Below are positions 56,346-57,282 of a stretch of DNA of 64,000 nt, piece by piece (the first letter of the stretch is position 1; each line of letters opens with the position of its first letter). The stretch covers positions 15,128,001 through 15,192,000 of the forward strand of contig NC_086383.1 in NCBI RefSeq assembly GCF_036588685.1, given 5' to 3'. The translations under genes were made by a program, and so were the position numbers. The notes under the pieces were generated by a model. It saw only the letters and a list, made by a program, of their open reading frames with translations, searched no databases and had not been told where the DNA came from. Source of the stretch: Mytilus trossulus (taxonomy: Eukaryota).

Positions 56346-57282
56346 CTGCAAATTTACAGATCTAACATTGTTGGGTTGATGTTTAGACGAGTTGTATATG
56401 CATTATGTACACAGCCATGTATCACCATCATTGATGGCGATCCGATGGATACATCTGTTGTAGGGTTGTCACTGACTCAGACGTACTTATGAATATAATT
56501 ATTTTCTGTGACTGTATCTTACATTAATTTGTAGGATCCCTTACTATAGATAATTTAGCTGATCTGTAACAATAACATCTTCATGCCTTATATATCATGT
56601 ACTGTAGTACGCCGCTAGATTAAAACTGACGTGGAAAGGTAACATATGGCCACCGAAAGCTCTTTTGAAGAGAGCCCAGGTGGTCGTGTGGTCTAGCGGG
56701 ACGGCTGCAGTGCAGGCGATTTGGTGTCACGATATCACAGAAGCATTGGTTCGAATCCCGGCGAGGGAAGAACCAAAAATTTGCGAAAGCAAATTTACAG
56801 ATCTAACATTGTTGGGTTGATGTTTAGACGAGTTGTATATATATATATATATATATATAAGTACGTCTGAGTCAGTGACAACCCTACAACAGATGTATCC
56901 ATCGGATCACCATCAATGATGGTGATACATGGCTGTGTACATAATGTATATACAACTCGTCTAAACATCAACCCAACAATGTTAGATCTGTAAATTTGCT
57001 TTCGCAAATTTTTGGTTCTTCCCTCACCGGGATTCGAACCCATGCTATTGTGATATCGTGACACCAAATCGCCTGCACTGCAGCCGTCCCGCTAGACCAC
57101 ACGACCACCTGGGCTCTCTAAGCCAGGTGGTCGTGTGGTCTAGCGGGACGGCTGCAGTGCAGGCGATTTGGTGTCACGATATCACAATAGCATGGGTTCG
57201 AATCCCGGTGAGGGAAGAACCAAAAATTTGCGAAAGCAAATTTACAGATCTAACATTGTTGGGTTGATGTTTAGACGAGTTG
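56346..57282. mobile_element. Copy-2-specific compound insertion in (TA)n: a permuted 441-bp unit with Pol III boxes and hammerhead, plus an inverted pair of heads
   Basis: gcaaatttacagatct recurs at 56348 and 56789. A box TGGTCGTGTGG at 56681-56691, B box GGTTCGAATCC at 56748-56758. Reverse copy 56859-57119, forward copy 57123-57282. Confidence 0.8.
56620..56668 (+). ncRNA. Candidate variant (A9U) type I hammerhead ribozyme
   Basis: TTAAAA-CTGACGT-GG(AAA)GGT(AACATATG)GCC(A)CC-GAA-AGCT-C^-TTTTGA; stem I TTAAAA/TTTTGA; palindromic stem III AGCT. Confidence 0.55.

What the first reader, a model, noticed from the sequence alone, without database searches (positions are those of the whole stretch)
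56346..56835. 441-bp permuted unit joining a variant hammerhead to a Pol III (tRNA-type) promoter
Seen: the insert starts mid-unit and wraps round (period 441). It contains a hammerhead-like fold with all three stems but U at position 9 (56620-56668). The A box starts 19 nt after the predicted cut (C56662), followed by a perfect B box. The other two copies begin about 6-13 nt after that cut. Known: the Schistosoma SMalpha repeats combine Pol III boxes with a hammerhead, and permuted >1-unit inserts indicate circular or multimeric RNA templates. Inference: a self-transcribing, self-processing SINE/retrozyme hybrid that targets (TA)n, distinct from the 355-bp family and possibly undescribed in this lineage.
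Basis: partly seen in the sequence, partly recalled or inferred. Interest (0 to 1): 0.8.

Follow-up and report, generated by a model that had tools for sequence, protein, structure and literature searches.

The report
tRNA-headed tandem retroelement, no hammerhead
This is a young, abundantly transcribed mobile element with a tRNA-type promoter that inserts into TA repeats as one to seventeen 441-base units, apparently copied by a Penelope-like retrotransposon, and the proposed hammerhead ribozyme in it does not hold up.

Summary
The 441-bp period, the permuted 1.12-unit insert (56348-56840), the two shorter copies beside it, the perfect B box and the (TA)n target are all real. The same unit forms arrays of up to 16.75 units at 38 fetched loci, 98-99% alike.

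The hammerhead is not supported. No Rfam ribozyme matches at E<=10, although Rfam finds 42 true type I hammerheads elsewhere in this genome.

What is there: a tRNA-headed, SINE-like element.
- Its 3' junction is fixed: 45 of 63 ends lie at TTTAGACGAGTTG-(TA)n.
- Its 5' ends vary and pile up at the expected Pol III start (11 of 62, p=1.5e-4).
- Some loci show target-site duplications. There are 12 head-to-head and 8 tail-to-tail inverted pairs.
- An autonomous Penelope-like element in the same genome (reverse transcriptase plus C-terminal GIY-YIG) ends the same way: TTTAGACTGA-(TA)n in 8 of 8 copies, TATAGACTTT-(TA)n in 5 of 5.

RNA reads cover the whole unit on one strand, cross both T-runs and show no discrete ends, so the RNA is multimeric or circular.

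My reading: a Penelope-mobilised, Pol III-headed relative of retrozymes and Sm-alpha, without a ribozyme.

Two other first-reader notes (s1-830142, s1-830002) flagged this family on other DNA of the same genome.

The parts
56335..56345 (.). Upstream remnant of the (TA)n target tract
   Evidence: Read. (D6) shows TATATATATAT directly before the insert. Nearly all other loci have (TA)n on both sides.
56348..56840 (+). Copy 1: 1.12 units (phase q3..441 then q3..54), the permuted insert of the finding
   Evidence: The same structure (about q430/q3 to q54, 493-495 bp) occurs at independent loci L033, L045 and L048.
56382..56399 (+). Internal copy of the 3' junction motif TTTAGACGAGTTGTATAT; here it runs on into the linker instead of (TA)n
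   Evidence: 110 internal against 35 terminal occurrences in the 38 loci.
56400..56497 (+). Extension. It ends at the second 3' junction site CAGACGTACTTA, which is used by copy 2.
   Evidence: 7 of 63 usable 3' ends lie at q140-152. Copy 2 ends here.
56504..56507 (+). First T4 run (weak Pol III terminator on the sense strand)
   Evidence: The run is T4 in 104 of 104 anchored units. RNA depth does not fall after it.
56563..56654 (+). Left arm of a long hairpin specific to the plus strand; it pairs with the tRNA-like head. It contains the CUGACGU box (56626-56632) in an internal loop.
   Evidence: MFE helices. Duplex energy -61.1 kcal/mol against shuffles -37.2 (sd 4.5); 0 of 1000 shuffles reach it. 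The minus-strand duplex is -39.9. 86.5% of cells are paired in 14 sequences, against 27-45% with slid partners.
56655..56675 (+). GAAA, then the apex hairpin GCTCTTT/AGAGAGC around the T-run (56663-56666 here; T5-T7 in most copies).
   Evidence: T-run lengths: T7 in 69, T6 in 20, T5 in 10, T4 in 6. 3 of the 7 apex pairs show changes on both sides in older copies.
56669..56683 (+). Zone where retro-copies begin (q324-338): the inferred transcription start
   Evidence: 11 of 62 usable 5' ends fall in q324-344 against 4.8% expected, p=1.5e-4. A tRNA +1 position would be 56682, counted back from the A box (my inference).
56689..56699 (+). A box TGGTCTAGCGG
   Evidence: Pattern match (L001:1844 = window 56689). 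A and B boxes are both exact in 121 of 130 heads.
56748..56758 (+). B box GGTTCGAATCC
   Evidence: 3 matches in the window, 0.08 expected.
56823..56859 (+). 3' junction of copy 1: TTTAGAC GAGTTG followed by (TA)12
   Evidence: 45 of 63 usable 3' ends lie here. TTTAGAC-N2-6-(TA)6 occurs 5837 times in the genome against 85 for the backwards control.
56860..57119 (-). Copy 2: inverted copy, from the head start (q324) to the second junction site (q144-152). It lies tail-to-tail with copy 1 across the (TA)12.
   Evidence: (I1, I3).
57123..57303 (+). Copy 3: 165-bp monomer (q331..441, 3..54) plus its (TA)n tail (57283-57303). It lies head-to-head with copy 2, 3 bp apart.
   Evidence: (I2: 169 nt, 99% complementary, 10 nt apart).

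Best explanation
The locus holds two or three insertions of one young family of non-coding retroelements.

ANATOMY
- Each unit carries a tRNA-derived head with intact A and B boxes, that is, an internal RNA polymerase III promoter.
- The body ends in TTTAGACGAGTTG followed by TA repeats.
- In the 441-bp form a 270-nt linker follows. Its last part pairs with the next head and ends in a T-run placed just before the next transcription start.

INFERRED MECHANISM
- Transcription starts a few bases after the T-run and often reads on into the following units.
- A reverse transcriptase whose nuclease nicks (TA)n tracts primes on the RNA where the motif 'AGAC, 3-7 bases, UAUA' can anneal to the nicked TA repeat.
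- It copies back for a variable distance. It often reaches the RNA's 5' end, and often both DNA ends are used.
- This would account for the fixed 3' junction, the variable 5' ends, the partial tandems and the head-to-head inverted pairs.
- The enzyme most likely comes from a Penelope-like element (reverse transcriptase plus C-terminal GIY-YIG nuclease) of the same genome, which shows the same junctions, target and architecture.

The element therefore works like a SINE in its promoter and like an animal retrozyme or Penelope element in its integration, but it has no hammerhead.

SHOWN: the anatomy, the insertion signatures, the RNA coverage and the absence of a hammerhead match.
INFERRED: the polymerase, the partner enzyme and how the multimers arise.
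For: FAMILY AND ARRAYS
- 145 matches from 40 scored of 892 candidates. Arrays of period 441 reach 16.75 units. Identity is 98-99%.
- Flanks differ between the 38 loci, and nearly all lie in (TA)n. Target-site duplications are seen at L039, L064, L051 and L057; L057 is a 4.27-unit array.

ENDS AND ORIENTATION
- 3' ends: 45 of 63 at q42-58 and 7 at q140-152. Both sites read AGAC-N-(TA)n.
- 5' ends: 11 of 62 in q324-344, p=1.5e-4.
- 12 head-to-head and 8 tail-to-tail pairs.

PROMOTER
- A and B boxes are exact in 121 of 130 heads. A T5-T7 run precedes the head in 99 of 105 anchored units.

PENELOPE-LIKE PARTNER
- Of its 40 scored copies (98-100% alike), 26 end at one site and 14 at a second.
- The fetched ends read TATAGACTTT(TA)n in 5 of 5 and TTTAGACTGA(TA)n in 8 of 8. 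In 2 of these 13 an inverted copy of this element's tail sits across the same (TA)n.
- Inverted pairs of that element, one arm ending at each site, recur at C1, C3, C4 and C11.
- In the 38 loci, 12 ends of other families also read TTTAGAC-N-(TA)n.
- Genome-wide the motif occurs 5837 times, against 85 and 29 for two controls.
- Published passages describe partial tandems, an adjacent inverted 5'-truncated copy, heavy 5' truncation and, for Naiads, (TA)n targets as marks of Penelope-like elements (PMC8557442, passages read).

RNA
- 4152 of 8.71 million and 5308 of 8.25 million records lie on the unit.
- Depth is 700-2500 over the whole unit, with a strand bias of 15-250 fold.
- Reads cross both T-runs, and no place shows many ends.

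NO HAMMERHEAD
-, with a positive control of 42 hits above the gathering score elsewhere in this genome.
Against: - The unit shares no extended similarity with the four Penelope-like loci compared. The link to a partner rests on a short motif, the target and the architecture. A LINE with the same end motif is not excluded.
- Reads cross a T7 run at near-normal depth. That is unexpected for Pol III, so another polymerase may make most of the steady-state RNA.
- The strand of the RNA rests on the usual library convention, which I could not calibrate.
- ARAGORN and Rfam see no tRNA in the head.
- The 38 loci are the best-scoring matches to this window's copy, so the phase statistics come from a biased sample.
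- Units within an array are more alike (0.33% divergence) than units between arrays (1.22%). This also fits growth of arrays in place by unequal crossing-over.
Confidence: 0.6

Rival explanations
1. One reading: each unit carries a working variant hammerhead (U at position 9) that cuts after C56662. This would release unit-length RNA that circularises, as in retrozymes and Sm-alpha.
For: - CUGACGU and GAAA boxes lie 22 nt apart, with GG/CC next to them.
- In 12 older copies that position is A in 7, giving an exact CUGANGA in 6. 7-10% of RNA reads also have A there.
- RNA covers the whole unit without ends, and a metatranscriptome contig closes on itself at 441+30 nt.
- The genome does hold true hammerhead retrozymes.
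Against: - No helix III is possible before the proposed cut.
- With the apex hairpin taken as helix III, position 16.1 is C, not U, in the window copy and in 10 of the 12 older copies.
- No helix I lies next to the core.
- No Rfam match at E<=10 in the window copy or the older copies.
- 0 descriptor candidates with up to 2 core deviations.
- The stems pair no better than controls.
- U9 is fixed in 105 of 105 young units.
- No ends at 56662/3 in RNA.
Confidence: 0.05
2. An ordinary LINE-dependent tRNA-SINE with a (TA)n tail. The 441-bp arrays and palindromes would arise afterwards in the DNA, by unequal crossing-over and repeated insertion into earlier (TA)n tails, with no Penelope-like enzyme involved.
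For: - Tandem-like and palindromic SINE structures, including TSD1-(SINE)n-TSD1, are described in bivalves and ascribed to recombination (PMC11481361, passages read).
- Divergence within arrays is lower than between arrays.
- No extended homology to four Penelope-like loci.
- Each insertion brings a new (TA)n tract that can be hit again, which would produce tail-to-tail pairs.
Against: - Independent loci share the same 3' phase but differ in 5' phase, and many are 1.1-1.6 units, too short to have grown by crossing-over.
- Head-to-head pairs join two 5' ends within 1-12 bp at the head start. That points to one integration event, not two.
- A Penelope-like element shows the same two-site junctions and the same inverted pairs.
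Confidence: 0.2
3. A circular RNA without a ribozyme. Unit-length RNA would be excised by host enzymes (for example tRNA-processing nucleases acting on the tRNA-like head or the long hairpin) and ligated. Rolling-circle reverse transcription of the circle would then give the multimers.
For: - Whole-unit, one-strand coverage with no ends, and a closed 471-nt contig.
- Only 2.6-5% of reads at q54 run into (TA)n, against 35 of 145 such junctions in the DNA sample.
- Only 6% of reads run on into unlike sequence in X21 and X22, against 58% in X24.
- The plus strand folds much better than shuffles, z = -4.7 to -5.2.
- Several arrays have identical units.
Against: - All of this is equally expected if a few long arrays, such as the 16.75-unit one, give most of the RNA.
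- 5' ends of retro-copies pile up at the head start, which implies linear templates with a defined 5' end.
- No processing signal has been identified.
- No RNase R or gel data could be had.
Confidence: 0.12

Closest known systems
Metazoan non-LTR retrozymes (mussel 350-390-bp repeats with a type I hammerhead; Cervera and de la Pena 2020, PMC7229834, passages read)
   Same: - Short tandem repeats, from under one unit to many units, with low G+C (41%).
- Abundant one-strand RNA over the whole unit.
- A proposed dependence on Penelope-like elements.
- The window itself holds 2.6 units of that family at 4685-5619.
   Different: - No hammerhead.
- No sequence similarity to that family.
- This element has a tRNA-type promoter.
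- It sits in (TA)n, whereas the window's retrozyme array does not.
- Circularity was not shown here.
Sm-alpha / Sj-alpha of schistosomes (SINE-like, tRNA-derived, with a hammerhead; described in PMC2770079, passages read. The original paper, Ferbeyre 1998, is not held.)
   Same: A tRNA-derived head on a short, high-copy, non-coding retroelement that also occurs in tandem.
   Different: Sm-alpha carries an active hammerhead; this element does not. There is no sequence relation that I could test, because no Sm-alpha sequence was available.
Penelope-like elements (Penelope/Poseidon/Neptune types with C-terminal GIY-YIG, and Naiads; Craig et al. 2021, PMC8557442, passages read)
   Same: - Heavy 5' truncation, partial tandems and an adjacent inverted 5'-truncated copy.
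- Microsatellite (TA)n target.
- The same AGAC-N-(TA)n junctions as an autonomous family in this genome.
   Different: - No ORF.
- 441-bp unit rather than 3-4 kb.
- A Pol III-type head.
- No extended homology to the four elements compared.
tRNA-derived SINEs of bivalves, including their tandem-like and palindromic structures (Martelossi et al. 2024, PMC11481361, passages read)
   Same: A and B boxes, a microsatellite tail, target-site duplications, short length, and both tandem and palindromic arrangements.
   Different: - Arrays here have a fixed 441-bp unit that includes a 270-nt linker.
- Up to 16.75 units occur, against two or three units reported for the Mytilus species in that study.
- The end motif is shared with a Penelope-like element, not a LINE.
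- Whether this family is in that paper's library could not be checked, because supplements are closed.

Membership tests
Hammerhead ribozyme | Conserved core: CUGANGA ... GAAA | tested here: not met
   The window copy and 105 of 105 young units read CUGACGU, with U at position 9. 6 of 12 older copies have an exact CUGANGA.
Hammerhead ribozyme | Three helices around the core, with helix III closed by A15.1-U16.1 and followed by the NUH cleavage site | tested here: not met
   - Only GCUC lies between GAAA and the proposed cut.
- With the apex hairpin as helix III, position 16.1 is C.
- No helix I adjoins the core.
- Descriptor scan of both strands of the circular unit with up to 2 core deviations: 0 candidates.
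- In control loci the scan found 3 true motifs and missed 2 of the 4 that Rfam listed.
Hammerhead ribozyme | Match to the covariance models (Rfam Hammerhead_1, _3, _II, HH9, HH10) | tested here: not met
   No match at E<=10 in 2.5 kb, in 231 nt, or in 12 older copies. Positive control: 42 of 48 listed hits are above the gathering score elsewhere in this genome.
Hammerhead ribozyme | Stems kept through evolution | tested here: not met
   60.6% of cells are paired, against 60.9% in shuffles and 59.9-61.9% with slid partners.
Hammerhead ribozyme | Self-cleavage | not testable with these tools
   RNA reads show no place where many molecules end. That is only indirect evidence.
Metazoan non-LTR retrozyme | Short tandem repeats (about 170-400 bp) of low G+C | tested here: met
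   Period 441, which is slightly above the published range, and G+C 0.41.
Metazoan non-LTR retrozyme | A type I hammerhead in the repeats | tested here: not met
   See the hammerhead rows above.
Metazoan non-LTR retrozyme | Abundant circular RNA of unit length | tested here: inconclusive
   Whole-unit, one-strand coverage without ends, and a closed contig. This fits both circles and multimers.
tRNA-derived SINE (SINE2) | Internal Pol III promoter: A box and B box at tRNA-like spacing | tested here: met
   TGGTCTAGCGG, 48 nt, then GGTTCGAATCC. Both are exact in 121 of 130 heads.
tRNA-derived SINE (SINE2) | Head recognisable as a tRNA | tested here: not met
   ARAGORN finds 0 genes in the window. 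No Rfam tRNA match at E<=10.
tRNA-derived SINE (SINE2) | Microsatellite or A-rich tail, and target-site duplications | tested here: met
   (TA)n tail at 45 of 63 ends. Duplications at L039, L051, L057 and L064. At most loci they cannot be told apart from the (TA)n itself.
tRNA-derived SINE (SINE2) | Tail shared with a partner LINE | not tested
   No LINE was searched for. The only shared end motif found is with a Penelope-like element.
Non-autonomous element mobilised by a Penelope-like element | Insertion architecture: 5' truncation, partial tandems, adjacent inverted 5'-truncated copy, microsatellite target | tested here: met
   compared with the description in PMC8557442.
Non-autonomous element mobilised by a Penelope-like element | 3' end shared with an autonomous element of the same genome | tested here: inconclusive
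   A short motif, AGAC-N3-7-(TA)n, is present at both termini of both elements. There is no extended homology (only 4 loci compared).
Non-autonomous element mobilised by a Penelope-like element | Mobilisation in trans by that element's protein | not testable with these tools
   This needs a retrotransposition assay.

The most novel reading that the evidence does not exclude
The 441-nt unit would be a 'retrozyme without a ribozyme'. A Pol III-started RNA would be excised at the T-run and hairpin beside its tRNA-like head by host tRNA-processing or other nucleases (or by an unrecognised self-cleaving fold descended from the CUGACGA...GAAA relic seen in older copies). It would then be ligated into a circle and copied by rolling-circle reverse transcription by a Penelope-like enzyme into (TA)n. 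That would be a second, ribozyme-independent route to small circular RNAs in animals.
Probability: 0.12. Interest if true: 0.85.

Novelty: new variant of a known kind. Interest (0 to 1): 0.55.

Why it matters
SINEs are taken to depend on LINEs, and the non-autonomous partners of Penelope-like elements are taken to be hammerhead retrozymes. Here a Pol III-headed element carries the integration signature of a Penelope-like element and has no ribozyme.

If the partnership holds, three things follow:
- Penelope-like enzymes can mobilise SINE-type RNAs.
- The hammerhead is dispensable for the tandem and inverted architecture.
- The shared 'AGAC-N-(TA)n' junction offers a concrete handle on how these enzymes choose target and template, which Craig et al. 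(PMC8557442) call undefined.

The family is young (98-99% identity), has roughly three thousand insertions, and is transcribed. That makes it a practical system for studying how such elements move. It is also a likely source of assembly and annotation trouble in mussel genomes.

My library searches turned up no description of such an element. Supplements of the bivalve SINE paper, which may list it, could not be opened.

Tried and rejected
HAMMERHEAD AND OTHER RIBOZYMES
- Rfam on 2.5 kb, on 231 nt, on the whole window at gathering scores, and on 12 older copies: nothing.
- My own type I / type III descriptor: nothing. Its recall is imperfect.

tRNA GENE
- ARAGORN found none.

DERIVATION FROM THE 355-358-bp RETROZYME
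- No similarity.

HOMOLOGY TO PENELOPE-LIKE ELEMENTS
- None in four loci, and no hammerhead in those loci.
- The 1056-aa family with an N-terminal GIY-YIG (Naiad-like) has no TTTAGAC-(TA)n end in the piece fetched, so I did not pursue it as partner.

HELITRON OR OTHER DNA TRANSPOSON
- Rejected: 5' ends are variable, target-site duplications are 5-10 bp, and there is no terminal hairpin or CTRR end.

ORIGIN OF THE LINKER AS AN INVERTED HEAD COPY
- DNA-level similarity is only weakly significant (12 of 1000 shuffles reach it), while the RNA duplex is strongly significant. I left this as an inference.

SELECTION ON THE LONG HAIRPIN
- Pairing is kept, but covariation is not beyond shuffles (20/500 and 84/500).

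OTHER DEAD ENDS
- The dip in RNA depth at 56633-56677 is probably caused by the 95% likeness filter, because this copy differs from most reads at 6-8 places nearby. I did not read it as a cleavage site.
- A linker-only genome search returned only diverged copies, because common words are skipped. It gives no copy number.
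Full report
WHAT IS IN THE WINDOW

Between two remnants of a TA microsatellite (56335-56345 and 57283-57303) lie three copies of one element. Phases are counted from q1 = 56346.
- Copy 1 (56348-56840, plus strand) runs q3..441 and then q3..54. It ends GTTGTATAT followed by (TA)12.
- Copy 2 (56860-57119, minus strand) runs from q324 to about q144-152. It lies tail-to-tail with copy 1 across the (TA)12.
- Copy 3 (57123-57287, plus strand) runs q331..441 and q3..54 and ends in (TA)n. 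It lies head-to-head with copy 2, 3 bp apart.

The B box is at 56748-56758, with 3 matches in the window against 0.08 expected. The A box TGGTCTAGCGG is at 56689-56699, which is 27 nt rather than 19 nt after C56662.

IT IS A LARGE, YOUNG FAMILY

- The window's own genome has 1.30 Gb in 541 contigs. The twelve contigs from which I fetched this family measure 63-104 Mb each.
- A search with the 490-nt insert gave 145 matches from 40 scored of 892 candidate places, at 98-99% identity. Many lie in head-to-tail arrays of period 441.
- I fetched 38 distinct loci and split them into 64 segments. Median length is 1.40 units and the maximum is 16.75. 46 of 64 are at least one unit and 21 are at least two.
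- Flanking sequences differ from locus to locus, so these are independent insertions. Nearly all sit inside (TA)n.
- Clear target-site duplications flank L039 (1.39 units), L064, L051 and L057 (4.27 units).
- The junction TTTAGAC-N2-6-(TA)6 occurs 5837 times in the genome. The same pattern read backwards occurs 85 times, and a permuted 7-mer 29 times.
- By my own count of the first 100 places listed, about 53 distinct ones carry this element's tail, within the first 22 Mb of one contig. That extrapolates very roughly to three thousand insertions.

ENDS

- Of 63 usable 3' ends, 45 lie at q42-58 (TTTAGACGAGTTG, then TA repeats), 7 at q140-152 (CAGACGTACTTA, then TA repeats), 4 at q66-68, and 7 elsewhere.
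- 5' ends are spread over the unit. They cluster at TA-like spots (around q400, q430/q3, q244, q148, q295) and at the start of the head: 11 of 62 lie in q324-344, where 4.8% is expected (p=1.5e-4).
- Counted back from the A box, a tRNA's first base would be 56682 (q337). The cluster therefore sits where Pol III starts on tRNA-type genes (established knowledge; the assignment is my inference).
- Arrays that begin there contain 1.36, 1.37, 1.39, 2.36, 2.36, 2.38 and 3.57 units. Templates with a defined 5' end therefore carried more than one unit.
- There are 12 head-to-head and 8 tail-to-tail pairs. In the head-to-head pairs the outer ends are mostly the two TA-primed sites. The window's copies 2 and 3 are one such pair.
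- These 38 loci are the best matches to this window's copy, so all these proportions come from a biased sample.

THE HAMMERHEAD DOES NOT HOLD

- The boxes CUGACGU (56626-32) and GAAA (56655-58) are there. Only GCUC separates GAAA from the proposed cut, so helix III cannot form.
- If the hairpin GCUCUUU/AGAGAGC (56659-75) is taken as helix III, position 16.1 is C, and no helix I adjoins the core.
- The UUUUGA that could pair with UUAAAA is private to this copy. Among 99 other units, 92, 85 and 78 have T at 56667, 56668 and 56669. The run is T7 in 69, T6 in 20, T5 in 10 and T4 in 6 anchored units.
- Rfam gives no hammerhead, no other ribozyme and no tRNA at E<=10 on 2.5 kb, on 231 nt, or on 12 older copies.
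- The method works in this genome. Hammerhead_1 gave 48 matches at E<=0.001 from 74 scored candidates, 42 of them above the gathering score, in repeats about 357-358 bp apart.
- My own descriptor (type I and III, both strands, circular unit) finds nothing with up to two core deviations. 15% of shuffles give at least one candidate at that laxity. On three control loci it found three true motifs but missed two of the four that Rfam listed, so on its own it is weak evidence.
Shuffles give 60.9% and slid partners 59.9-61.9%.

In the older copies the 'position 9' base is A in 7 of 12, giving an exact CUGANGA in 6, and 7-10% of RNA reads have A there. A decayed ancestral hammerhead cannot be excluded. 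In the young copies U is fixed (105 of 105).

RNA

The unit was laid on four runs.
- In two 2026 raw-read runs of one study (X21, X22), 4152 of 8.71 million and 5308 of 8.25 million records lie on it.
- Depth is 700-2500 across the whole unit, linker included. First mates fall 15-250 times more often on the minus strand. By the usual library convention this means RNA of the plus strand, the tRNA-head sense. I could not calibrate the convention.
- Most reads differ from the window copy at 56400, 56540, 56645, 56649, 56667-9, 56741 and 56747.
- 554-568 of about 654 reads carry TTT at 56667-9 away from their ends, so they cross a T7 run into the head.
- No place shows many molecules beginning or ending.
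- Only 31 and 74 reads run from q54 into TA repeats, where depth is about 1180 and 1450. In the DNA sample, 35 of 145 such sites are terminal.
- Only 6% of the laid reads run on into unlike sequence.
- A third run (X24) shows 186 of 12.7 million records, both strands equally, mostly over the SINE part, and 58% run into unlike sequence. That is what embedded copies inside other transcripts would give.
- A metatranscriptome contig of 471 nt (441+30) closes on itself.

The RNA is therefore element-only, one-stranded, and either multimeric or circular. These data cannot tell which.

A PARTNER

The genome is rich in GIY-YIG reading frames: 150 matches from 615 candidates.
- One family (L068) has RVT_1 followed by a C-terminal GIY-YIG, the canonical Penelope-like layout.
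- Of its 40 scored copies (97-100% alike), 26 run to one 3' end and 14 stop 85 nt earlier.
- I fetched 13 of those ends. All 8 early ends read TTTAGACTGA(TA)n and all 5 late ends read TATAGACTTT(TA)n.
- In 2 of the 13, the (TA)n is followed by an inverted tail of the 441 element. In 2 more it is followed by an inverted end of another family.
- Inverted pairs of this Penelope-like element, one arm ending at each site, recur on four contigs.
- Both elements thus share the (TA)n target, two alternative termini that each read 'AGAC, 3-7 bases, TA repeat', 5' truncation, and tandem and inverted arrangements.
- Twelve ends of at least four other repeat families in my 38 loci read the same way.
- Published passages name exactly these features as hallmarks of Penelope-like elements, note (TA)n as the Naiad target, and call the mechanism undefined (PMC8557442).
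- A 2026 preprint argues that animal retrozymes are non-autonomous Penelope derivatives (10.64898/2026.07.22.740005; abstract and passages read).

Against the partnership: the unit has no extended similarity to the four Penelope-like loci I compared, and I searched for no LINE.

STRUCTURE OF THE UNIT

- The plus strand folds far better than shuffles (circular MFE z = -4.7 and -5.2), and better than the minus strand does (z = -2.4 and -3.0).
- The main feature is a long interrupted hairpin. Positions 56563-56654 of the linker pair with 56679-56741 of the head, and the T-run sits at the apex.
- The duplex energy is -61.1 kcal/mol against -37.2 (sd 4.5) for shuffles; 0 of 1000 reach it. The minus-strand duplex is -39.9, so many of the pairs are G-U.
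- The reverse complement of the left arm resembles the head only weakly at the DNA level (12 of 1000 shuffles reach the score).
- My inference is that the unit began as an inverted 5'-truncated copy next to a direct copy, the same architecture seen at insertion sites, and has since diverged by transitions.
- Pairing is kept in older copies (86.5% against 27-45% with slid partners). It is barely above shuffles (85.8%, 20 of 500), and covariation is not significant apart from three compensated pairs in the apex helix.

HOW THE MULTIMERS ARISE IS OPEN

- Units within an array differ by 0.33% on average, and several arrays have identical units. Units of different arrays differ by 1.22%.
- This fits copying of one template many times (rolling circle or repeated template switching). 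It equally fits growth in place by unequal crossing-over. Bivalve SINE arrays have been ascribed to the latter (PMC11481361).

COMPARISON AND VERDICT

- The element works like a SINE in its promoter and like a retrozyme or Penelope element in its integration.
- It is not a hammerhead-bearing retrozyme, because that defining feature was tested and not met. It is not related in sequence to the mussel retrozyme family, which sits in the same window at 4685-5619.
- The closest published analogue is Sm-alpha of schistosomes: tRNA-derived and SINE-like, but with an active hammerhead (PMC2770079, passages read).
- My searches of the held library found no description of a tRNA-headed element with a Penelope-type insertion signature. 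Supplementary files, which may list this family among bivalve SINEs, were closed.
The chromosome-scale contigs and the hammerhead repeats of about 357 bp suggest a mussel of the kind studied in PMC7229834, but that is inference.
- Two other first-reader notes (s1-830142, s1-830002) describe the same family on other pieces of this genome with the same hammerhead idea. My tests speak against that part for the family as a whole.

Noticed in passing
window 4685-5619 (and a fragment at 12127-12199): 2.6 units of a 355-358-bp tandem repeat, 96% identical to repeats elsewhere in the genome that carry Rfam-scoring type I hammerheads (L072). The window copy shows the 3' half of the motif at about 5560-5580, yet no hit reached the gathering score in the whole-window scan. 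Its flanks are not (TA)n.
   Followed up: partly
window 55885-56125: A 21-bp tandem repeat, 11.5 copies at 70% match (unit ACTGAACATAATGTAAAAACT), about 200 bp upstream of the insert.
   Followed up: no
L033, L035, L041, L042, L054, L056 (next to the 441 arrays); also L075, L083: Another repeat family ends ...GGTTTGAACGTAGTTTTCAATTTAGACTCGT(TA)n, often tail-to-tail with the 441 element or with the Penelope-like element across one (TA)n. Two further families end ...TTTTTAGACACTA(TA)n and ...TTTTTAGACCCT(TA)n. None was identified.
   Followed up: partly
L067 (G000:C10:30945500-30951500): A 1056-aa open frame with an N-terminal GIY-YIG (aa 183-273) and no Pfam reverse-transcriptase hit. It is repeated in tandem with period 4277 at 99.8% identity, and many copies in the genome have the full 1056-aa frame. 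This is the Naiad-like layout.
   Followed up: partly
window 56563-56741: A long hairpin pairs the linker with the tRNA-like head. It is G-U rich and specific to the plus strand, with the T-run at its apex. Possible meanings are a relic of an inverted copy, a processing signal, or a trace of RNA editing.
   Followed up: partly
RNA runs X21/X22 against the genomic sample: Most RNA reads carry C at 56645 and C at 56649, whereas only 8 of 99 sampled genomic units do. Either a minority subfamily gives most of the RNA, or my genomic sample (chosen for likeness to the window copy) is skewed.
   Followed up: no
L046 (G000:C7:49489932-49493671): A complex nest of six segments of the element in both orientations, with unusual ends (q108-111, q66-68).
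   Followed up: no
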